Part shown: positions 3,824-52,479 of the stretch, one piece after another | Position numbering within the stretch: position 1 is the first letter of the stretch | Layout of the letters: each line of letters begins with the position of its first letter | Assembly (NCBI RefSeq): GCF_006345805.1 | Contig: NC_043000.1 | Coordinates: 94,798,001 to 94,862,000 of the forward strand | Direction: 5' to 3' | Length of the DNA: 64,000 bases | Source: Octopus sinensis | Taxonomy: Eukaryota | Program-made: the position numbers and the translations under genes | The notes under the pieces: generated by a model | The model's input: only the letters and a program-made list of their open reading frames with translations | Database searches by the model: none | What the model was told of the DNA's origin: nothing

Positions 3824-6492
3824 TTATTTTCCGTTTTTATATGCCCTCACAAATACCTTTCCACCAATTTTGAAATATCTTACTGTATTATCCGTTGCAA
3901 TATTTCTTTTCTTTCTAAGCAACAATATGTCAAAGTCTAATTTTATTTTCCTCGCAAAGATCAGCTCCAACGGTGACATATATGCTGGGGTATCTAGATT
4001 TGGTGTCACACAGTATACTCTTAAAATTTGTGTTAAAGCTACCACATCCGACTTTCTTAAGACTCTCTTATTGACAAAGCGTTTTGCTTGTCTGTTAGAT
4101 CTGGAATGGTATGGCGCCGTCGTTACATGTTCAACAGCGAACGTTTTGCAAAGCTTTTTGAATTCAAAAGACACAAATTGCGTTCCTTTGTCAGACACTA
4201 TCGCGTCTAGGATGACAAATCTCGCTAACAGATCGAGTCAAAAATTTGTCGCAGTTGAGGAGGTTGGCTTTTTACACTTGCAAATTTCTGGTCATTTAGA
4301 GCAACTATCTTCTACCACTAAGTAGTATGAGCCGTTTAAGGGACAAGCAAAATCGATGTGTAGTCTCGACCACGGAACATGTACTATTGCTAAGGTTCAC
4401 TTTTTATCGTCGGTTAGTTTGCCGCGAGAGCACAGCTTCTACAGCCTTTCATTACATTTTAGATTTCTCTATCCGATTTTGGCCAGTACACGTAGCTACG
4501 CATTAAAGCATTCATCTTTGAAATACCAGGATGTCCAACATGAAATTCCCTCAGCATTTCCTTTTGTAATTTTTCAGGTGTTACTATTCTCTGTGCATAC
4601 ATCAGTACGTCATCATAAATTGAGTATAGGTTCAAGTCTTGGTTTAGTTTCGCACCAGTCATGTTCCTATTTACTTTTTCTGACCACAGTATTCTTTTAA
4701 TTTCTGTTATGGATTTATCCTTTACCGCATTCCGTTTTAGTTCTCCTAGATTTACCGGTAATTCGCGTACCACATTCCACATTACATTTTTCATTTCTCC
4801 TTCTGCTCTTAAAGCTGCGATTACCGTATCTTCGAATGGCTCCCTGTGTTTCGGTATCAGTCTGGACAAATCATCCGCATGCCCTAGTTTGTTGTACAGT
4901 AAATATTCCATTTTGTAATCATAATTCAATAATGTAGTGCTCCATCGCTGTAGTCTATTCGCTGTGTGTTGGTATTCCTTTTTAGAACCGTATATTGATA
5001 GTAATGGGCCATATCCGTTTGTAGACAGAAACTTCTTCCATGAATAAATCTATGGAATTTATTCACACCGAATATGATTGCTAATACTGTCTTTTCTATT
5101 TGACTATAGTTCCTTTCAGCTGGTAATAAAGATTGTGACGCATGGGCTATAGTCTTTTTACTGCCATCGTCATATTTGTGCAGAAGCACTGTTCCTATAC
5201 CGTAATCACTCCTACCTGTAGCCAATATAATATCCAACTTTGGATCAAAATGCATTGATGATAAATCCAATCTTAAAATGTTTTTAACTCGTCTTCTGGC
5301 ACTTATTAGTCTATTACCATTTTGCATTTTTCTTTAACAAATCGTTATGTATATTGGAAATATTAATTTGATAATAATTTACTAAACCCAAGAATGCTTG
5401 TAGCATAGTCACATTATTTGGCGTGAGCATATTTTTTATTGCAGTTACTCTGAATGGATCTGGTTTCCATCCGTTTTTATCAATTATCTGGCCCAAGTAT
5501 TTACCTGTTTTTAGAAAAGTCTCGCATTTTCCTTACGTTAACTTAAATCCGTATTCTCTAATCTTTTTTAATACCCTTTAACGTGCTCTGCATTTTGTTC
5601 ATGCTTATGGTTTTTTTATTAGAGTATCGTCTAAATAGACGATAGAAAAATCACAATCACACACCATTGCATCCATTATTTTCTGAAATATGGAAGGATC
5701 CACCTTTACAGCGAAGGGAAGCCACTTAAATTTAAATAGACTACGGTGTGTATTAAATGGTTAATAAATGTGAGCATTCTTCTACTAGGATTTGTAGATA
5801 TGCTTCCGAGAGGTCTAATTTTGAGAAGAATTTCCTTCCATTCAATTTTGCAAACACTTCTTCAGGATTCTGCAATGGGTAGTTATTTGAGATTAAGCAA
5901 TCAACAAGCCCATTTAAAAAACCCGCATGAATAATCTTCACTTATTTATATTTTTTACGAAAACCGTAGGTACTACCCAGTTTGAGTGGTTCGTCTTCTC
6001 GATTATTCCTAGGCTTTCAAGTGTTTCAAGTTCCTTCTTTATCTGTCCTATTGCCGTAAATGGTACATTCCGTTTTGGCTGTGATACAGGTATTGCACTT
6101 TGTTTTACCATAATCTTTGCCCAGTTTCTCCGGGAAAACTTCTGAAAATAAAGGTTTTGTTTATCGTCTCAGCCGGATTCGAACCTTCTACTGAACCGAC
6201 TATATTCCCACATAAAACACTTATGGGCATATTCCACAATTTGAATAGTTCTATCCACGAACAGATTGACTGAATTTTGTGACACATATACCTTTGCCGT
6301 TTTCATTTGGTCACGAAATGTCACATTACACACAAATTCACCTACAAAATACAATCTTTTACCCGTTACACCGTAAGCTACTTTTATAGATTTCCTTAAT
6401 TTTGACTTAACCATATACTTCCAAGTTTCTTCATTCATAATGGTAATATCACTTCCAGTATCTAACTGCATTTTTACAATGCATATTTTCAA
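3824..6492 (-). pseudogene. Gypsy pol (protease, RT, RNase H, integrase), frameshifted
   Basis: MQLDTGSDIT (protease); YPLQNPEEVFAKL..FFSKLDLSEAYLQI (RT); DYGIGTVL..AERNYSQIEK (RNase H); HVGHPGISKM..YVYWP (IN zinc region); TTAPYHSRSN (IN core). A CCHC-like gag knuckle lies near 6630-6730. Confidence 0.9.
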
Positions 6493-7688
6493 TTTTCACA
6501 TTTACAAAATGTGAAAATATAACAGAGAGGACTTACAAAATCCTCTTTGTTATATTACCATTTTCTTTCGACGACACCTTAGTTATTCTTTTTCCTTTAT
6601 TGCAACGTTTTGTCGTAGTTTTACAGAGCGCTTTTAGATGTTTAATTTTTCCGCAACGGAAGAATTCCGCTTTCTTAAATGAGCAGTTTTTTTCTTAGGT
6701 GTAGACCTTCACATGCAAAACATGGGTTTGTCTCCTGATTTTTTTTTACCTGTTTGTGTTGTATTTTAGTACACCCTGGATTTCTATTTGCCTGTTTTGT
6801 ATTTTCCGACGCTCGTGTTTCACTTGGGAGCGATCTTTATGTTCAGTTTCTCTGTATCGTGTCTTAAATTTATTGTCCTTTCACATGTTACTGACACATG
6901 TTGTAAGGTTACAGCATGGTTTTGTTCCAGCTTATCGAGAGATATTTTTCTTCTGCGTCTTTCTCTGCGGTTAGTCCCTAGGTAAATATCAGGCACTTGA
7001 ACATGTCTGGAGTTAATTCGTTCAGTTTGAACTTCACACATTCTCTTTTAACTCTACCAGCATGTGTTGTATTCCTCCTCGTTGTTCTTCTCTAGATTCA
7101 AATATTTCCAGTATCTCTTGAACAACGAGCTTTTCTCGCCAAAGATTTTGCACAATATGTCTATTATACTTTTAAAGTTTGTCAGAAGGCATTCTCGTAA
7201 GTACATAATTGCAGTAACGCTTATGATCTGCTGCAGCCAGTTTTATTAAGATTAAATGCGTTTTCATATTGTCGTCCTAATCTTTGCACTCTTTATTGAA
7301 AATCTGTCCCAATCTTCCATAGTACACCTCGAAGGTAACTCGTTCGTCTGAATTCCGCCATTGAGTTGCAAACTAATCTGGTGAGAACATTTTTTCAGCA
7401 TTTTTGGACGACTTACTTTTCATAAGTAGCAGCATTTTTTTGCTGCAATAGTAATGGGTGTTGTTGTTGCTTCTGCTGATCTTCCAGTAGTTGTAGCTGC
7501 AGCTGTTGTTGTTCTTTCAGTTGTTGATTTTACTGCTTTTGCAAATCAAGCGAAACCAACTAAAATTTTTTCTATAATTTTACAATCTGGTATACCGTAA
7601 AATTAAAACAAAGAACTTTCGTTCTGAGTTTAATAACTCCTTGTGAGTTTGTTAATTTCACGTGAGTTTGTTAATTCCTTGTCGCCAC

Positions 7689-12492: not shown

Positions 12493-13415
12493 CAATACAG
12501 ACAATTGTCGGCTTTATAACGTGAGTTCTATAATAAAGATATAATTTTCTCTGAACGTACTCCTTGTTATACTTATATACATTCATGTCTGTCTGTCAGC
12601 TTGTACGCACACATGATGGGCTTTTTCTCAATTTCCACCAACCAAATCCATTCATAAAGTCGACCCCGCGGCACGGTAGATGATTGTTACCCAGGTAACA
12701 CGCAGCAGGGCTGAAACCGCGAAATATGTGGTTGTCAAGCAAACTTCTTACCACTGCTATGCCTACGCCTCTACAGATTCTAAGTTTTTTAAAAGGCCAT
12801 TGAAAAACGTATCTCGTTTTAATCAGCAATATACTCACCCATCGTGAATCAACAGTTATATCTACATTGAGAGATATTACTTCGGTTTTATTTTGTACTG
12901 ATCTCCTCTCGAACATTACCACCGCCGAAACACTATCAGTACCTGTTGTATAAGTAGGAATAATATTGTTTTTATACATTAAATTTCCCTGCTGTTCACT
13001 TACGTACAATTTGCGATTTCCAGAATATTCAACAATCTTTCCATTTCCAGACCACCGACGAAGTTTGTAATTGGGTTTCTTTGTCGTTGTTCCTGTTGTT
13101 TCTTTTTCCAAGATGAATATATTCATCATGCACGTACGTATTTTATGTGCATGTCAGAGGACATGCGTGTGTATGCGAGTGGGTGGGTGAGTGAGATAGT
13201 GCCGTGTGTATGTTCGTATGTGTGGGTAAGTGTGTGAGAGTTATTTTGTTGGTTGTTCACATTCTGAAAGCCATAGCATTCTTATATCAATGCTCGCTAA
13301 TGCTGTTTGTCATCACATACTTCGCTGAGATTTGTTAAATAGATTCTTTCAGGTAAGACCTTTTTCAGCAGTGTATCATGCATGTACATGTCTATATATA
13401 TATATATAATATATA

Positions 13416-13462
<47 letters not shown>

Positions 13463-13475
13463 TATATATATATAC

Positions 13476-13546
<71 letters not shown>

Positions 13547-13572
13547 TATATAGATACATATGTATATATATA

Positions 13573-13613
<41 letters not shown>

Positions 13614-13671
13614 CATTATTGGTGAATTGAAGAAATGGAGCTGAACGCAGATTGAACAGAAATCGTTTTAT

Positions 13672-13758
13672 TTCATTCTACACGTGTTTCGAAAGGCACA
13701 AATTACCAAAATCCGATTGAATAATGGGACCATATTGTGTCTTTCTCTTCAGGAAGAA
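13672..13758 (-). ncRNA. Type I hammerhead ribozyme (left arm copy)
   Basis: Reverse complement of the motif at 16126-16212. Confidence 0.8.
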
Positions 13759-14361
13759 AAAGGAAATCCGTTGGAAAAACAAAAACAGAACAGAGGCGGA
13801 GCAAAACACAAATCGAACTGTGCTCCTAAGAGCCCATGGCGAAACTGTTTATCAGTGTATGTTGAGAACCGGTGGCTGAAGAATTCAACGGGTCAGGCAT
13901 CGGTCAATCATGTGGGTGAGGGTGTATAGATGTTCTTTGTGACCGAGAATAAAGTTCTGACTATTTAAAGAATATTGGATGTTTTATAAGTGGCGAGAAA
14001 AAATCTACTTAGAGACGTGTGTGTGTGTATACTGTTCTATATATGTGTGTGTTGGCGTAGGGGTAGAAAACATTTTTTGTGTACGTGTGTGCGTTTGATC
14101 GTTCGGCTGTCAGTGGCTACTGCCGTGATAACCGTTGGGTGGCAGAAAGAAAAAAATAAAAAAATTTATATATATATATGTTTTATGTGTGTGTGTGTTC
14201 ATCTAAGCCTACCTTGTCAAGGAAACCCCCCGCTGTGAAAAAACCAAGCCCCGTTTGTCTTACAGGAGTAATTCCCCTTGCAGTGGTCAATCGTAGATAT
14301 CTTAAAGGCTATTTCAGAATTTGTTACCAAGGGCTATGGGTGCCGGTATTATTTATAAACG

Positions 14362-14932
14362 CTATTTAAAGGCCAGATAAGTGTAACGCCGCCAATGGGG
14401 GCATCGAAAAGCCGACTGTAAGAGCCCGTTTACCATCCGGCCTCTGGCAAACAAAATATGGAAGAGTTCGGAGACACAAAGGTTGCACTGTCTTCTGCCC
14501 CTATCAAATGGGAGGGCCACCGACAAAATTGACCATTCCAGCCTATAGCTTAAGTTCGCATCCTTCAGTCGCCATATTAGCTTACTGAGTCCCGTGGTCT
14601 GGCGCTTGTTCACGTCCCGAAAAGTTGCGTAATGGTTGGAGACACGCAAAGACAATCTTGAGGATGATGCCCCTACATAAGTGAAGGCATCTGAGTCCGT
14701 GTAAACCTTGCATTGGTAGACGGCGTTTTTGATCTTGGAGTTCGCCGACGTGAATCTTAATCTGCTAGGATTGGTTTCTGAAATTAGAACTGCGTTCCTG
14801 TCACTATATTCGTTCCGAGACCTGCAGCCGCTTACTACTCTATTTTCCACTACGTCACTATTAACTATAGGAATAACCCCTGATTCTCCACTATCTATCA
14901 GAGTGCTGTCATTGCTACTGCCCGTGGTACTG
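14362..14932 (-). CDS. GIY-YIG endonuclease frame (PLE type), left arm, no in-frame ATG upstream
   Basis: Mirror of 14950-15520 with identical translation; part of ORF 14362-15153. Confidence 0.8.
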
Positions 14933-14949
14933 CCGTGGTACCGCAATAG

Positions 14950-15520
14950 CAGTACCACGGGCAGTAGCAATGACAGCACTCTGATAGATAGTGGAGAATC
15001 AGGGGTTATTCCTATAGTTAATAGTGACGTAGTGGAAAATAGAGTAGTAAGCGGCTGCAGGTCTCGGAACGAATATAGTGACAGGAACGCAGTTCTAATT
15101 TCAGAAACCAATCCTAGCAGATTAAGATTCACGTCGGCGAACTCCAAGATCAAAAACGCCGTCTACCAATGCAAGGTTTACACGGACTCAGATGCCTTCA
15201 CTTATGTAGGGGCATCATCCTCAAGATTGTCTTTGCGTGTCTCCAACCATTACGCAACTTTTCGGGACGTGAACAAGCGCCAGACCACGGGACTCAGTAA
15301 GCTAATATGGCGACTGAAGGATGCGAACTTAAGCTATAGGCTGGAATGGTCAATTTTGTCGGTGGCCCTCCCATTTGATAGGGGCAGAAGACAGTGCAAC
15401 CTTTGTGTCTCCGAACTCTTCCATATTTTGTTTGCCAGAGGCCGGATGGTAAACGGGCTCTTACAGTCGGCTTTTCGATGCCCCCATTGGCGGCGTTACA
15501 CTTATCTGGCCTTTAAATAG
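14950..15520 (+). CDS. GIY-YIG endonuclease frame (PLE type), right arm, no in-frame ATG upstream
   Basis: NAVYQCKV..TYVGAS..LSLRVSNHY..TTGLSKLIWRLKD..LEWSIL..CNLCVSE..MVN..CPH; domain ~15152-15517, stop 15518-15520. Confidence 0.8.
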
Positions 15521-16125
15521 CGTTTATAAATAATACCGGCACCCATAGCCCTTGGTAACAAATTCTGAAATAGCCTTTAAGATATCTACGATTGACCACT
15601 GCAAGGGGAATTACTCCTGTAAGACAAACGGGGCTTGGTTTTTTCACAGCGGGGGGTTTCCTTGACAAGGTAGGCTTAGATGAACACACACACACATAAA
15701 ACATAATATATATATAAATTTTTTTATTTTTTTCTTTCTGCCACCCAACGGTTATCACGGCAGTAGCCACTGACAGCCGAACGATCAAACGCACACACGT
15801 ACACAAAAAATGTTTTCTACCCCTACGCCAACACACACATATATAGAACAGTATACACACACACACGTCTCTAAGTAGATTTTTTCTCGCCACTTATAAA
15901 ACATCCAATATTCTTTAAATAGTCAGAACTTTATTCTCGGTCACAAAGAACATCTATACACCCTCACCCACATGATTGACCGATGCCTGACCCGTTGAAT
16001 TCTTCAGCCACCGGTTCTCAACATACACTGATAAACAGTTTCGCCATGGGCTCTTAGGAGCACAGTTCGATTTGTTTTTTGCTCCGCCTCTGTTCTGTTT
16101 TTGTTTTTCCAACGGAATTCCTTTT

Positions 16126-16212
16126 TTCTTCCTGAAGAGAAAGACACAATATGGTCCCATTATTCAATCGGATTTTGGTAATTTGTGCCTTTCGAAACAC
16201 GTGTAGAATGAA
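16126..16212 (+). ncRNA. Type I hammerhead ribozyme (right arm copy)
   Basis: Helix I TTCTTC/GAA(T)GAA; core CTGAAGA 16132-16138; helix II GAAAGACACAA/TTGTGCCTTTC; GAAA 16194-16197; minimal helix III C-ACGT-G; predicted cleavage after GTA at 16205. Confidence 0.82.
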
Positions 16213-16423
16213 ATAAAACGATTTCTGTTCAATCTGCGTTCAGCTCCATTTCTTCAATTCACCAATAATGTTTTAATTTCAATTATCCGCACCAACGCAC
16301 GGTTGCAACACCAGATGGTTGTACCTCCAACCGTGCTGTTTACTGCTGTGATTTTTGCTACTAAGGTATCGGTTAAACTGTTGATTAATCTACTACAAGA
16401 TTATTCATCTTTCTATTTCACAT

Positions 16424-16470
<47 letters not shown>

Positions 16471-16738
16471 GTATATATATATATATATATTGACATACAT
16501 ATAGAGATATATATATAAAGGCATGTATATGTATACCTTAAGCATGTATATACATATGATTGTGAGAGCATATACATAAATATACATACACACATACACA
16601 CATACAAACATATATATATATACAAAGATACGCGTTCTCCTCGTGTCGCTGCGAGCACATACTGAGAACATTAGTTTCTAACCACGTTCTGTTCATAATG
16701 AATACATGCGAGTGTATGTATTCTTATGTGTATGTGCA

Positions 16739-23489: not shown

Positions 23490-24279
23490 GTACCTTGTTC
23501 TGGAAATTGCAGTTTATAAGCGACAGACTACGCTGAGGAACTTGCAGATATCTGCGTGTTTTATATACGTAGGTATTAACAAGTGAAACCAATTAGTATG
23601 TAGGTAATCGTTTATATCTCGTATATTTTCATTTGTATTGATCATTTTTACAATTTGGCGTTTTTGCTGAGATTTTTTTCTTGAGAACACATACTTCGTG
23701 GTAATGGTGATTTGCCGTCTATGTTTAGCATATAGGGTGTCCACTTTAGTGGTCATTCCTCTTAATTTTGTATGTAACACAGTTTTTAATCTTCGGATTT
23801 TTAAATATGCTAAGCCACTGGTTTTAATTGATTAACATCAATTTCTACTCCTATTTACTTTTAAATAAAATATGTTCTCTAACTGGTAAATTAGCTGCTG
23901 AAATTTATTAACTGCAGAGTAATTTCCGGCCTCAGCGCGCCAAAGTGAAGGCATTTGAAAGAATATACCCAAATATAAAGTATAGAACTTTCTACATGCT
24001 CTATTTCGATTGAGCATTCTGTACCTAGTTCTGGAAATTGTGTTTTGCAAGCGACAGACTACACTGAGGAACTTGCAGATATCTGCGTGTTTTATTTACG
24101 TAGATAGTAACAAGTGGAACCAATTGCTACGTAGGTAATCGTTTTTATTTCGTATATTTTCAATTGTCTTAATGATTTTTACACTTTGGCGCTTTTGCTG
24201 ACATTTTTTTCTTGAGAGCACATTCTTCGTGGTAATGGCGGTTTGACGTCTATGTTTAGCATAGTGGTCATTCCTCTTG

Positions 24280-28480: not shown

Positions 28481-29285
28481 ATCAATTTTAAAGAAATTAC
28501 TTTTGAGTGGGCATGTACTTTTGTTGCGGTATTTGCATTGAAAGGTTGGAACAATCAATTGTTAGGGGTAATTTCTGTATTTTTTCTATGAATTATGACT
28601 AGCGAAGAGGCGAATTTGTCCTTGCAACTGTAAATGTGTGAAATTTATGGTTGCTAAGGAATTGTTTGTTTATTAAGCTTTAAAAGGGCTGGCAATATTG
28701 CTTTTAATGCTTAAAGTGAAGTGGGCGTTAAGCCATATGCTTTTTCTTTTACTAATTTTGTTAGCATTAAGCGTTCCACGTTGAGGATTTATTTTATCAT
28801 ATCGCTAAAGCCGATTCTTTCCGGGCCTTCGTTCAGAATATAGCAGCAAAATCAAAAAATTCCTTATTAGAAAAAAAATTTAGATGTTTTTTATGATGTC
28901 TATTGGCAAGTTCTTTAATGATGTTAGGTGGGTGGTTAGAGTTTTTTATTAATATAATCTATTTTTAGTATAGGAGCAGTAGATTCCCATCGTTAGATTC
29001 ATTGTGATGCCTAAGAAGTATACTGAGCTAGCATTGGTAGTAAATGTAATTTCGAAATCGAAGCTCCTGCACTCGTTCATTAAGTCTTTTATAAGATTGT
29101 CTGACTGATCCTCCATTTTTATTGCGTGTTAATATAAAGCTGTCACTTGTGAACAATCCTAACTCTGTCAAGTTGAATATTGAATCTAAATACAATGTTG
29201 TCCAAAATAAATAGGTTTACAATTTTCCAAACCTCTGCTTCATCATAACAGCGTATTGGCACATCAAAGAAGTTTGGTCCACGTG
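28480..29285 (-). mobile_element. Decayed PLE RT/thumb/linker fragment (FDV.MG.YDGAEV-type lineage)
   Basis: Minus strand FFDVPIRCYDEAEVWKIVNLFIL, SNHPPNIIKEL, KRKSIWLN, CKYRNKSTCPL. Confidence 0.75.
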
Positions 29286-50316: not shown

Positions 50317-51144
50317 ATATGGGTACAGGACGTCATAAAACGTAAATATGAAATACGAAGACAAGCTTTGGTATGCGAACAAGACAAAGAAAATGGAAAA
50401 CAAGACAAGTAACATAAAAAACGACCCTTCAACAGTTGTCGGCTGTCCATCGACTCCTCATTTCGAGCAATTAAGAATACTGTGAGGCTTCGAAAAGGCT
50501 TCGAAAGTTGCTCACGCGACGGGGCTAAAGTTGATGATTTTGAATGATCCCAATTTTCTTTTCAACAACAGCTAAATTTATTCGGAGTTGGTAAGTATAA
50601 AGATTGAAATTGTTATTGTTAGCTGATGTGGGGGACTGGAAGCCATTTGAATATTAGAAAAGAGATATTTGTATCATGACAATTCGCGCCGGGTATTAAA
50701 ATGTCAACATCATGGTTCCTGCCCAATGCTCCATGAAAACTGTAAAGGCTGTAAGACATGACAAGGACATTATGAAAAACAAGTTCCCAGAATCTGTGAT
50801 AGGCTTTGTATGTGTCCTCAGTGAGGACGAAGTCATACATTTATGAACAGAGTCTTAGGCCCATTTCAGGCGGCTAAGTGAAGCTACTGGAGACTTTGAT
50901 GAAACTTTGACTGGCGAGGGTTTTTGCTCGAAAGCCATAAGTGTGGCAGCTGGATATGGTTCCTTAGCATAACTCCGGAAAGAGGCAGAAATGCTAGTCG
51001 CAGAATTTCTACGACTTCACCAGCATCAATTTCTGGTCTACTAATTCCAGGGATTAATAATCCCATGCATTCCTTATCCCATGGATTAATATGTGTGGCG
51101 AATCGGTTGTCAAGCGATCTTGGGGGGACAAACACAGACGCACG

Positions 51145-51216
<72 letters not shown>

Positions 51217-51217
<1 letters not shown>

Positions 51218-52479
51218 CCTCTATCTCTGATTCCCAACACGGCTTCGTGCCGAAGAGATCATGCTTGACCAACCTACTAGTAATGGAAGAATTGGTGACG
51301 CGCATCCTCGATGATAGTGATGCTGTTGACATCGTTTTATTGGACTTTGCCAAAGCTTTTGACTCGGTAAACCACCGCCTATTGCTTGTCAAGCTTCAAG
51401 CATATAGTTTCCATCCGGATATTGTACGATGGGTTGGTGCCTTCCTCTCAGATCGCTCCTTCCAAGTCCAAGTTAATGGTTCGCGGTCCGACGTCTCCAG
51501 TGCGAGCAGTGGCGTGCCTCAAGGTTCAGTGCTTGGGCCCTTGTTGTTCTTAGTCTTCATAAATGACTTGCCCGACGACCTCACGCAACACACCCTTCTA
51601 TTTGCCGACGATATCAAACTGGTCGCTCCTCGCGGTAATATAGAGGATCTTCGTCGATGCCTCCACCAAATTTGGAAGTGGTCTAACAATTGGGACCTGT
51701 GTCTGAACGTGTCAAAGTGCTATCATCTGCCTGTCGGCTCTACTCCTGCAACTCAACTTGATTTCGAGCCGGGTCGTCTGCTGCTGGAGAGGACCGATCA
51801 GGTAAAGGACCTAGGTATCTTGGTGGATTCCTCCTTTTCGCCTTCGGCCCAGTGCGTCCATGCTGCTAACAAAGCACGCGGAATTCTGTTCTTGATTCGA
51901 CGGTCATTCGGAATGCTCACAGCAGCCATATTCCTACCACTCTATGTCACGCTGGTGAGACCCATATTGGAGTATGGGATTCAAGCCTCTTCTCCTTATC
52001 TTCTCAAAGACATACAGCATCTCGAAAGAGTCCAGAAGCTGGCTACCCGCATGGTTCATGGTCTCAAAAATTTGTCCTACGAAGAAAGGCTGAGGACGCT
52101 CGACCTTTATTCTCTTGAAAAACGCCGCCGCCGTGGTGATCTCATTCTCGCCCACAACATCATAAGCGGAAAGTGTAACCTCTCGAAAGAGCTGTTCTTC
52201 ACTCCTGCTCCGGAGCGTCGGCTGCGGGGTCATTCCGAAAAGCTCTACCTGCGACGATTTCATCTCAATCGAAGGAGAGGAGCTTTCTCCGTCCGGGTTG
52301 CGGATCCGTGGAACAAGCTGCCAGACGAGATGGTGAAGATGCCGACGACCGCTTTGTTCAAAGCCTCCCTTGACCTTAAGTGGCCTGAACTCTTTACATG
52401 AACACCACCCTGTACTTAACTCCATGTCCCCCTACATGGCCTTGCTATTTGCTTTTGAGCCAAATTAACTATCTAACTA

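What the first reader, a model, noticed from the sequence alone, without database searches (positions are those of the whole stretch)
13612..16272. 2.66-kb palindromic, RT-less Penelope-like unit: two outward-facing GIY-YIG frames capped by hammerhead ribozymes
Seen: two ~1.32-kb arms in head-to-head orientation around a 17-nt spacer. Only 4 differences noticed by eye, all in the outer non-coding part. Both arms end at the same base (..CACCAATAATGTT), ~67 nt past the predicted hammerhead cut site. Left flank is (TA)n and no TSD is visible. Established: PLEs encode GIY-YIG, carry hammerheads in their pLTRs and often show inverted partial copies. Inference: here the inversion covers the entire inserted unit and is co-terminal, as expected if a complete hairpin cDNA was made and integrated. 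If such palindromes recur with a fixed centre, this would be a non-autonomous endonuclease-plus-ribozyme hairpin element that borrows RT in trans.
Basis: partly seen in the sequence, partly recalled or inferred. Interest (0 to 1): 0.88.

Follow-up and report, generated by a model that had tools for sequence, protein, structure and literature searches.

The report
Head-to-head Penelope-like retrotransposon insert, octopus-type
The palindrome is real, but it is an ordinary product of Penelope-like retrotransposons: two 5'-truncated copies inserted head-to-head in a (TA)n microsatellite, one with an extra 3' "tail", not a new RT-less hairpin element.

Summary
The inverted repeat exists: arms 13612-14933 and 14949-16275 around a 15-nt spacer, with 5 internal differences, all in the outer non-coding part. 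Each arm holds the open 3' end of an ORF whose 2,543 homologues form a GIY-YIG endonuclease family, and the longer homologues carry a reverse transcriptase upstream. Each arm also has a type-I hammerhead. Rfam misses it, but three diverged copies support it with a complete core, 91% pairing and six compensatory pairs. Two parts of the interpretation fail. The arms are not co-terminal: the right copy runs ~146 nt further, to ~16421, through sequence homologous to an Octopus sinensis relative, and both ends of the 2.8-kb insert abut (TA)n. The unit lacks RT only because both copies are 5'-truncated; relatives extend into RT, have no inverted partner, and the arms' frame has no ATG. The endonuclease features, hammerhead and (TA)n target fit the Hydra clade of Penelope-like elements. 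Head-to-head inverted copies with a one-sided tail are a published hallmark of these elements. The short and long 3' ends recur in independent copies, matching the two reverse-transcription start sites shown in vitro. It is a new member of a known kind. A genome-wide census of copies could not be run.

The parts
13400..13611 (.). Left flank: (TA)n microsatellite, the target site
   Evidence: Sequence read directly; TA/AT dinucleotide fraction 0.88.
13612..14933 (-). Left arm: an inverted, 5'-truncated PLE copy (EN 3' part, 3'UTR, hammerhead) that ends at the 'short' 3' end and has no tail
   Evidence: It matches the reverse complement of 14949-16275 at 99.6%. Its outer end lies within ~13 nt of the tail-less end of the independent copy in L001, which also abuts (TA)n.
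14362..14933 (-). Left-arm remnant of the GIY-YIG endonuclease ORF (stop codon 14362-14364)
   Evidence: tblastn gives 100% identity to the right-arm frame. The mechanical ORF list runs it across the centre to a TTG, which has no biological meaning.
13662..13764 (-). Left-arm type-I hammerhead (core 13752-13679, predicted cut after 13679)
   Evidence: Motif scan; covariance-model hit of 119.8 bits.
14934..14948 (.). 15-nt spacer CGTGGTACCGCAATA at the head-to-head junction. It overlaps a second direct copy (14933-14941) of the 9-mer CCGTGGTAC (first copy 14922-14930); the inverted copy is at 14952-14960
   Evidence: The 9-mer occurs nowhere else in the 64-kb window. The spacer cannot be assigned to either arm.
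14949..16421 (+). Right copy: 5'-truncated PLE copy with a complete 3' end (EN 3' part, 3'UTR, hammerhead, tail)
   Evidence: for the palindromic part. Homology to L003 runs through 16129-16420, up to (TA)n in both loci.
14948..15520 (+). Right-arm remnant of the GIY-YIG endonuclease ORF (190 codons plus stop; no ATG upstream of the domain)
   Evidence: Translation. There are 2,543 homologues. Y, Y-x-G, R, H, CxxC-x2-E and N are conserved. Pfam GIY-YIG hits 6 of 80 homologues. The predicted fold is beta-beta-alpha-alpha-beta-alpha, and its top structural hits are Hpy188I, I-TevI and T4 EndoII.
15521..16119 (+). 3'UTR / pLTR-equivalent region; fast-evolving, with internal (CA)n, (TA)n and A-rich runs
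   Evidence: No detectable similarity to the same interval of L003, although the spacing is similar (~676 vs ~688 nt).
16120..16222 (+). Right-arm type-I hammerhead: helix I, CUGAAGA, an 11-bp helix II with a conserved 33-nt loop, GAAA, a 2-bp helix III with palindromic loop ACGU, GUA, and a predicted cut after 16205
   Evidence: Rfam is negative.
16276..16421 (+). 'Tail': 3'-terminal element segment present only on the right copy. It contains an AC-rich stem-loop (16299-16336) and a conserved ATG (16315) that opens a frame to the element's end
   Evidence: 74% identity to the L003 3' end. It is absent from the left arm and from L001. Stem-loop.
16422..16500 (.). Right flank: (TA)n microsatellite
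   Evidence: Sequence; TA/AT fraction 0.79.

Best explanation
The feature is one insertion of a Hydra-like Penelope-like retrotransposon (PLE) into a (TA)n microsatellite. It is a by-product of PLE integration and has no function of its own.

The insert consists of two 5'-truncated copies joined head to head, each running EN C-terminus, 3'UTR, hammerhead.

Proposed mechanism (inferred):
1. The element's RT-EN protein, supplied by a full-length copy elsewhere, cut both strands of the AT-rich target.
2. Each 3'-OH primed reverse transcription of element RNA.
3. The top-strand cDNA started at the proximal ('short') initiation site, giving the left arm's end ...CACCAATAATGTT.
4. The bottom-strand cDNA started ~146 nt further 3', at the distal ('long') site, giving the right copy's end at ~16421 and its one-sided 'tail'.
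5. Both cDNAs ended at the same place in the low-complexity region between RT and EN, most simply because the template RNA ended there.
6. They were joined by a template jump of one cDNA onto the 3' end of the other, leaving a 15-nt offset.

Shown here: the anatomy, the family assignment, the two alternative 3' ends and the truncation.

Inferred: the order of events, and the choice of two-strand priming over snap-back.

The frames lack a start codon. PLE hammerheads with such a short helix III are thought to need a second copy in the same RNA, which this unit cannot supply. The unit is therefore most likely inert.
For: Family:
- EN homologues number 2,543, and the long ones carry RT motifs upstream.
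- L003 and L009 show RT, linker and EN on one strand.
- Hydra-clade EN traits are present: no Cys pair between GIY and YIG, CxxC before the conserved E and CxH after the conserved N, and a CxCX5C linker in relatives (criteria from PMC8557442).

Hammerhead:
- The core is complete.
- 91% of cells are paired, against 39-53% in slid controls.
- Six pairs have compensatory changes, against 0-1 in controls, across three diverged copies.
- The long helix II and short palindromic helix III match those described for PLE hammerheads (PMC4209133).

Target:
- (TA)n lies at both ends of the window insert, at both ends of L003 and at the 3' end of L001.

Two alternative 3' ends, each seen twice independently:
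- Long end: window right copy and L003.
- Short end: window left arm and L001.

Literature:
- A purified PLE protein cleaves and extends both strands, starts reverse transcription at two internal sites, and the tail is the sequence between them (PMC11167929).
- An inverted 5'-truncated copy and a tail at one end are typical of PLEs (PMC8557442).
- Head-to-head repeats with palindromic junctions are abundant in PLEs (PMC3846280).
Against: - Two independent cDNAs need not stop within 15 nt of each other. The model requires a template RNA that ended there, or a shared block, and I could not test this.
- The tail is ~146 nt here, against the 30-40 nt reported for other PLEs.
- The two short ends differ by up to ~13 nt.
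- Only three family copies from one other genome could be examined.
- The biochemistry comes from a Poseidon-clade element of a lizard, not a Hydra-clade element.
- The junction shows no clear microhomology for either model.
Confidence: 0.5

Rival explanations
1. Snap-back (self-priming) during a single target-primed reverse transcription. The bottom strand primed a cDNA from the long site to the truncation point. The cDNA's 3' end folded back and copied itself outward, making the left arm. That strand was then joined to the upstream (TA)n at an AT-rich patch ~146 nt short of the template's end.
For: - It explains at once why both arms share the same inner end.
- Self-priming was proposed for PLEs because palindromes occur at inverted junctions (PMC3846280).
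- The spacer region holds a second direct copy of the 9-mer found at the arms' inner ends (also present inverted in the right arm), a non-random trace of slippage or switching at the turn.
- The arms are almost identical.
- The tail means the right copy must be the primary one, which this model allows.
Against: - The left arm's outer end falls within ~13 nt of an independent tail-less 3' end in L001. Snap-back does not predict this: its joining point should be arbitrary, and many AT-rich patches are passed earlier.
- The observed junction is not the one predicted from priming on the 8-9-bp self-complementarity. There are 11 extra nt, and the actual primer end would have almost no pairing (analysis of the sequence).
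Confidence: 0.28
2. DNA-level inverted duplication after an ordinary single 5'-truncated insertion, through fold-back repair of a break or replication template switching.
For: - Palindromes can arise this way.
- The near-identity of the arms and the short spacer with a repeated 9-mer are compatible with a template switch at a short inverted repeat.
Against: - Such events copy whatever lies next to the break. Here the palindrome stops at element landmarks: the inner end lies inside the element, and the outer end lies at a recurrent short 3' end.
- (TA)n lies on both sides of the whole insert.
- No flanking host sequence is duplicated.
Confidence: 0.08
3. Assembly or chimeric-read artefact: one real 5'-truncated copy was mirrored by a fold-back read.
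For: - PLE tandem and inverted structures are known to cause assembly problems (PMC8557442).
- Two or three of the differences between the arms are run-length differences, typical of long-read consensus error.
Against: - A mirrored read would also mirror the flank. Here the two sides have different unique flanks.
- The arms end at different, biologically meaningful 3' ends that independent copies in another genome confirm.
- Two true substitutions separate the arms.
Confidence: 0.07
4. One reading: a mobile, non-autonomous palindromic unit (endonuclease plus ribozyme) that is copied as a whole and borrows RT in trans.
For: - PLE pLTR sequences can be mobilised in trans (PMC3846280).
- HHR-bearing non-autonomous derivatives of PLEs are described in vertebrates (bioRxiv 10.64898/2026.07.22.740005).
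- The EN frame is intact over 190 codons.
Against: - The window holds no second copy.
- None of the relatives' loci is palindromic.
- The frame has no ATG.
- The ends are asymmetric.
- An RNA spanning the unit would fold into a 1.3-kb perfect hairpin, a poor template.
- The closest copies are ordinary truncated RT-EN elements.
Confidence: 0.04

Closest known systems
Hydra clade of C-terminal-EN Penelope-like elements (Craig, Yushenova, Rodriguez & Arkhipova 2021, PMC8557442)
   Same: - C-terminal GIY-YIG EN without the CCHH cysteines between GIY and YIG.
- CxxC before the conserved E and CxH after the conserved N.
- Relatives carry the CxCX5C linker.
- Hammerhead present.
- Insertion into (TA)n.
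- Reported from Mollusca.
   Different: - The window's subfamily (with Octopus sinensis P0001/P0002 and Logan P0003/P0004) has no cysteines in the linker (NP-x-R-h-R-F-x-S-x-N-S-K), yet still sits in (TA)n.
- It has an N/S-rich low-complexity stretch before the EN.
- RT-based phylogeny and the clade's RT motifs were not tested.
Canonical PLE insertion architecture: an inverted 5'-truncated copy or inverted pLTR next to the element, with a 30-40-bp 'tail' at one end (Arkhipova et al. 2013, PMC3846280; Craig et al. 2021; Frangieh et al. 2024, PMC11167929)
   Same: - Head-to-head orientation.
- A near-symmetric junction with a short offset. A 15-bp overlap is reported for Pen2a_Av; a 15-nt spacer is seen here.
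- A tail on only one side.
- An AT-rich target.
- No clear TSD.
   Different: - Both copies are truncated at the same internal ORF position, so the insert is almost entirely palindrome, with no full-length copy or direct pLTR.
- The tail is ~146 nt rather than 30-40 nt.
PLE minimal / type-I hammerhead ribozymes (Cervera & de la Pena 2014, PMC4209133)
   Same: - Complete catalytic core.
- G10.1-C11.1 closing pair.
- A helix II that is longer than usual.
- A 2-bp helix III capped by a palindromic loop (ACGU, or AUAU in L003), as expected for ribozymes that act as dimers.
   Different: - Helix II is 11 bp and carries a 33-nt loop that is more conserved than the stem (invariant AUG and UUAUUC).
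- No Rfam hammerhead model reports it, even at E<=10.
L1 'twin priming' 5' inversions
   Same: Both target strands prime reverse transcription in one event, which produces inverted segments.
   Different: Twin priming uses one RNA and yields an inversion without duplication. Here the same ~1.3 kb is present twice.
Non-LTR retrozymes, non-autonomous HHR-bearing derivatives of PLE pLTRs (Li, Clavereau & Pollet 2026 preprint)
   Same: They are RT-less, contain a hammerhead, and derive from PLEs.
   Different: - Retrozymes are short tandem non-coding repeats thought to propagate through circular RNA.
- This unit is a single inverted pair with a coding remnant and no sign of amplification.

Membership tests
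Penelope-like element (EN+) | GIY-YIG endonuclease domain | tested here: met
   - Y73, Y86-x-G88, R97, H101, C150-x2-C153-x2-E156 and N169 are conserved in 80 homologues.
- Pfam GIY-YIG is the only recurrent family: 6 of 80, best E 1.2e-4.
- The model has GIY-YIG topology, and Hpy188I, I-TevI and T4 EndoII are among its top structural hits, none individually significant.
- Pfam is negative on the window protein itself.
Penelope-like element (EN+) | Reverse transcriptase in the same ORF as the endonuclease | tested here: met
   Met in relatives only:
- P0032 and P0014 have RT motifs (YRDD) upstream of the EN.
- L003 has RT C-terminal sequence upstream of the EN.
- L009 has RT motif C, linker and EN on one strand.

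The window copies have no RT because they are 5'-truncated. They are fragments of such an element.
Penelope-like element (EN+) | RT groups with PLE/TERT-like RTs in phylogeny | not tested
   No reference RT set was available. Pfam RVT_1 did not report the relatives' partial RTs.
Penelope-like element (EN+) | Hammerhead ribozyme motif in the terminal repeat region | tested here: met
Penelope-like element (EN+) | Direct pseudo-LTRs flanking the ORF | tested here: not met
   No direct repeat of the 3' region exists in the window or in L003. This is expected for 5'-truncated copies, so it does not argue against membership.
Penelope-like element (EN+) | Inverted or tandem insertion structure with a one-sided 3' tail | tested here: met
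   Head-to-head arms. The tail is on the right copy only.
Hydra clade of PLEs | [quoted passage not shown] | tested here: met
   No conserved Cys lies between VY and Y-I/V-G in 80 homologues. The window has a single Cys there.
Hydra clade of PLEs | CxCX5C linker upstream of the EN | tested here: not met
   - Present in relatives: P0005 CNCRDKNKC, P0008, P0041, P0014.
- Replaced by the Cys-free NPSRLRFTSANSK in the window and in P0001-P0004.
- I therefore call the element Hydra-like rather than a certified member.
Hydra clade of PLEs | [quoted passage not shown] | tested here: met
   CNLCVSE and N...RCPHW in the window protein; conserved across homologues.
Hydra clade of PLEs | Insertion into (TA)n | tested here: met
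   The window at both ends, L003 at both ends, and L001 at its 3' end.
Hydra clade of PLEs | RT peculiarities (DKT instead of DKG, RWK motif) | not tested
   There is no RT in the window. Relatives with an RT are fragments of unknown origin.
Type-I hammerhead ribozyme | Conserved core C3-U4-G5-A6-N7-G8-A9, G12-A13-A14, and an A15.1-U16.1 pair followed by H17 | tested here: met
   All core positions are present and invariant in three diverged copies; the cut site is GUA or GUC.
Type-I hammerhead ribozyme | Three helices supported by covariation | tested here: met
   91.2% of cells are paired against 39-53% when partners are slid. Six pairs change on both sides, against 0-1 in controls. 0 of 500 shuffles reach the observed pairing. 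Only three sequences were available.
Type-I hammerhead ribozyme | Match to an Rfam hammerhead covariance model | tested here: not met
   No hit at the gathering score or at E<=10. The likely cause is the 55-nt helix II insert and the minimal helix III.
Type-I hammerhead ribozyme | Self-cleavage | not testable with these tools
   Needs an in vitro transcription and cleavage assay.
- The window holds no second copy.
- L001 and L003 show no inverted partner; the Logan contigs L004-L012 show none either, but are too short to be informative.

The most novel reading that the evidence does not exclude
The insert may be an in vivo record of a single PLE integration in which both target strands primed reverse transcription. 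One strand would have used the proximal and the other the distal RT start site on a truncated template. If inverted pairs across the genome show all short/long combinations, that would extend the two-strand, two-start-site model, so far shown only in vitro for a lizard Poseidon element, to a mollusc Hydra-like lineage. That lineage has a ~146-nt tail and has lost the cysteine linker thought to direct (TA)n targeting. The more radical reading, a self-propagating palindromic EN+ribozyme unit, is not excluded but has no support.
Probability: 0.3. Interest if true: 0.45.

Novelty: new member of a known kind. Interest (0 to 1): 0.25.

Why it matters
For general biology this is an ordinary transposon remnant.

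For PLE specialists there are four modest points:
1. One locus shows both alternative 3' ends, short and long, flanking a head-to-head pair. The in vitro two-strand, two-start-site model predicts exactly this.
2. A cephalopod sublineage of Hydra-like PLEs has lost the CxCX5C linker cysteines but still inserts into (TA)n. This weakens the proposed link between that linker and target choice.
3. The family's hammerhead has an unusually long helix II with a conserved loop and escapes the Rfam models, so motif-based censuses will undercount such elements.
4. RefSeq annotates relatives as 'dyrk1' or 'DDB_G0288805-like' proteins, and these names are annotation errors.

Tried and rejected
- **Rfam.** Neither the gathering threshold on the whole window nor E<=10 on the region gave a hammerhead. 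The only hits were spurious miRNA-like matches to the palindrome centre and the TA repeats.
- **Pfam on the window protein.** Nothing.
- **Word-indexed protein search.** The window protein found nothing. Two profile searches returned only six relatives in all: P0001-P0004, P0006 and P0064.
- **Profile search against PDB sequences.** No meaningful hit.
- **Scans of metagenome and prokaryote genome collections.** I searched for a 19-mer conserved between the window and L003. The 37 hits were all chance matches limited to the 19-mer.
- **Exact-protein look-ups.** Four window ORFs were tried in order to locate the source genome or sibling copies. None is on record.
- **Assigning the 15-nt spacer to one arm by comparison with L003/L001.** Undecidable, with scores of 54 vs 52.
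- **Simple snap-back priming on the 8-9-bp self-complementary motif.** The predicted junction lacks 11 nt that are observed (from the sequence).
- **Other hammerhead-like pattern hits in the window (23533, 52090).** Rejected as chance: the second lies inside a LINE RT ORF, and neither was found by the family covariance model.
- **The PLE RT fragment at 28682-29268 as the missing RT of this family.** Rejected: it has no similarity to the L003 RT/linker.
Full report
**1. The observation**

The window contains a near-perfect inverted repeat. The arms are 13609/13612-14933 and 14949-16275, separated by the 15-nt spacer CGTGGTACCGCAATA. The inner 757 nt of the arms are identical.

The arms differ by two substitutions, one extra T in a T run and one extra base in a (TA) run. 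One further base at the outer boundary is ambiguous. All of these lie in the outer, non-coding 570 nt.

No other copy of the arm occurs in the 64-kb window. The left flank is (TA)n.

**2. The frames**

A 190-codon frame runs outward from the centre in each arm and ends in a stop codon at 15518-15520, or 14362-14364 in the left arm.

Pfam reports nothing for this protein, and a word-indexed search found nothing. An exhaustive HMMER search of 1.84 billion representative proteins found 2,543 homologues, 352 of them at E<=1e-10.

- **Conserved residues.** The alignments show Y, Y-x-G, R, H, CxxC-x2-E and N. This is the GIY-YIG catalytic pattern.
- **Pfam on homologues.** GIY-YIG is the only Pfam family that recurs among the homologues: 6 of 80, best E 1.2e-4.
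- **Predicted structure.** The AlphaFold model is moderate, with pLDDT 70-85 over the core, and has the order beta-beta-alpha-alpha-beta-alpha. Its best structural matches, none individually significant, include three different GIY-YIG nucleases: Hpy188I, I-TevI and T4 EndoII.

The longer homologues carry reverse-transcriptase motifs (for example YRDD) and a conserved linker upstream of this domain. The frames are therefore the C-terminal endonuclease of an RT-EN polyprotein.

**3. The clade**

Craig et al. 2021 (PMC8557442) define the Hydra clade of Penelope-like elements by these features:
- a C-terminal EN that lacks the CCHH cysteines between GIY and YIG;
- a CxCX5C linker;
- CxxC and CxH motifs around the conserved E and N;
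- hammerheads;
- insertion into (TA)n.

They report the clade from Mollusca, among other phyla.

The window protein has no Cys pair between GIY and YIG, and it has CNLCVSE and N...CPHW. Its more distant homologues have CNCRDKNKC-type linkers. The window protein and its closest relatives have a Cys-free linker instead (NPSRLRFTSANSK and similar). Those relatives are Octopus sinensis P0001/P0002 and Logan P0003/P0004.

I therefore call the element Hydra-like. RT-based placement was not possible.

**4. The hammerhead**

Rfam finds no hammerhead, either at the gathering score or at E<=10. Both arms nevertheless carry a complete type-I hammerhead:
- helix I;
- CUGAAGA;
- G10.1;
- an 11-bp helix II with a 33-nt loop;
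- C11.1-GAAA;
- a 2-bp helix III with the palindromic loop ACGU;
- GUA, with the predicted cut after 16205 (13679 in the left arm).

A related O. sinensis copy (L003) is 72% identical in the EN and has no detectable similarity in the 3'UTR. It is 74-78% identical across the hammerhead and the sequence after it.

A covariance model built from these two sequences found a third hammerhead at the expected place in a more distant copy, L001, with a CUGAUGA core and a GUC cut site (E 8e-14).

On a plain MAFFT alignment of the three sequences:
- 91% of cells are paired, against 39-53% when partners are slid by 1-3 columns;
- six pairs change on both sides, against 0-1 in the controls;
- no shuffle out of 500 reaches the observed pairing.

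The core is invariant. The long helix II and the short palindromic helix III match the description of PLE hammerheads (PMC4209133). The hammerhead call stands.

**5. The ends**

The 146 nt to the right of the palindrome (16276-~16421) are not flank. They are 74% identical to the 3' end of the L003 element, and in both loci the similarity runs up to a (TA)n tract. The inserted unit is therefore ~13612-16421, lies in (TA)n on both sides, and is asymmetric. The right copy has a 3'-terminal segment that the left arm lacks.

The L001 copy also lacks this segment. It ends ~50 nt after the hammerhead cut site, directly at (TA)n, within ~13 nt of the point where the window's left arm ends.

The family therefore has two alternative 3' ends, each seen twice independently:
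- short: the window's left arm and L001;
- long: the window's right copy and L003.

This is the PLE 'tail', an extension found at only one end of an insertion (PMC8557442; PMC3846280). Here it is ~146 nt long instead of 30-40 nt.

**6. Why the unit lacks RT**

Both copies are 5'-truncated.
- L003 starts ~1 kb further 5', inside the RT C-terminal region, right after a short (TA) run. It has no inverted partner.
- L009 has RT motif C, linker and EN on one strand.
- The arms' frame has no ATG before the domain.
- None of the relatives' loci shows an inverted partner, although the Logan contigs are too short to be informative.

**7. Mechanism**

A purified PLE protein cleaves and extends both target strands. 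It starts reverse transcription at two internal RNA sites, and the tail corresponds to the sequence between them (PMC11167929).

Two-strand priming gives exactly the observed orientation: the 3' ends point out and the 5' ends meet. It also explains why each outer end falls at a recurrent 3' terminus next to (TA)n.

The shared inner end, offset by only 15 nt, is then best explained by a template RNA that ended in the low-complexity region between RT and EN, followed by a jump of one cDNA onto the other.

The main rival is snap-back self-priming, which Arkhipova et al. 2013 proposed for PLE inverted repeats.
- It explains the shared inner end directly.
- It fits the second direct copy of the 9-mer CCGTGGTAC that overlaps the spacer.
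- It does not predict that the left arm stops at the short-end site.
- The junction is not the one expected from priming on that self-complementary motif.

My estimates are:

| Explanation | Probability |
|---|---|
| Two-strand priming | ~0.5 |
| Snap-back self-priming | ~0.28 |
| Later DNA-level inverted duplication | ~0.08 |
| Assembly artefact | ~0.07 |
| Mobile palindromic unit | ~0.04 |

That the feature is a PLE insertion product of the known inverted type I hold at about 0.85.

**8. Comparison with known systems, and novelty**

Every component is already described: the GIY-YIG EN remnant, the hammerhead, the (TA)n target, the head-to-head inverted copies and the one-sided tail.

Three things are particular to this locus and family:
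- the equal truncation of the two copies, which makes the insert almost entirely palindrome;
- the long tail;
- the Cys-free linker, and a hammerhead that escapes Rfam.

This is a new member of a known kind.

**9. Limits**

- The source genome could not be searched.
- Only three family copies, all from one other species, were available.
- Read-level support for the assembly could not be examined.
- No ribozyme or protein activity was tested.

Noticed in passing
window 16139-16193 (helix II and its loop); L003 7420-7474; L001 7543-7596: The 33-nt loop of hammerhead helix II is more conserved than the stem. AUG (16151-16153) and UUAUUC are invariant in all three diverged copies. In the lizard PLE studied in vitro, the ORF starts at stem II. 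Here the AUG opens only 8-21 codons.
   Followed up: partly
window 16299-16421: The tail contains an AC-rich stem-loop (CACGGTTG...CAACCGTG, 16299-16336). It also contains an ATG at 16315, conserved in L003, whose frame stays open to the element's end ~107 nt later. This resembles published PLEs, where RT starts ~111-118 nt into the ORF, and it may be the polyprotein's N-terminus.
   Followed up: partly
window 15113-15160 (protein residues ~56-71); P0001-P0004: The window's subfamily has replaced the CxCX5C linker cysteines of Hydra-type relatives with a conserved Cys-free motif (NP-x-R-h-R-F-x-S-x-N-S-K). All three copies examined still abut (TA)n. This argues against the linker cysteines being needed for (TA)n targeting.
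   Followed up: partly
window 14922-14960: The 9-mer CCGTGGTAC occurs twice in direct orientation (14922, 14933) and once inverted (14952) around the palindrome centre, and nowhere else in the window. The junction can also be drawn as a 9-bp stem, a 10-nt loop and an 11-nt duplication.
   Followed up: partly
window 28682-29268 (- strand): A fragment of a PLE-type reverse transcriptase from a different family. It matches P0032 residues 199-398 and has no similarity to the L003 RT/linker.
   Followed up: partly
window 51091-52401 (+ strand): A 436-aa ORF with a Pfam RVT_1 domain (E 3.8e-27), LINE-like, preceded by a (CA)n-encoded His/Thr run.
   Followed up: partly
window 4459-4929 (- strand): An ORF fragment with an integrase H2C2 zinc-binding domain (E 7.4e-9); a remnant of an LTR retrotransposon.
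   Followed up: partly
L001/L002 2965-4083 (- strand) and 6022-6957 (+ strand): Two PLE copies of different families lie head-to-head ~1.9 kb apart in Octopus sinensis. Their ENs are only ~25% identical. The minus-strand copy has (TA)n about 0.6 kb beyond its EN, at 2039-2392. This is probably nesting in a TA-rich region rather than a single event.
   Followed up: no
P0001, P0002 (Octopus sinensis RefSeq proteins); L001-L003: RefSeq names these proteins 'uncharacterized protein DDB_G0288805-like' and 'probable serine/threonine-protein kinase dyrk1'. They are N/S-rich PLE linker plus EN fragments, and the gene models even splice across them. The N/S-rich stretch between RT and EN recalls the N-rich inserts reported in rotifer Penelope elements.
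   Followed up: partly
window 23533-23598 (+ strand): A loose hammerhead-like pattern (CTGAGGA...GAAAC...GTA). The family covariance model does not support it, and it is probably chance.
   Followed up: partly
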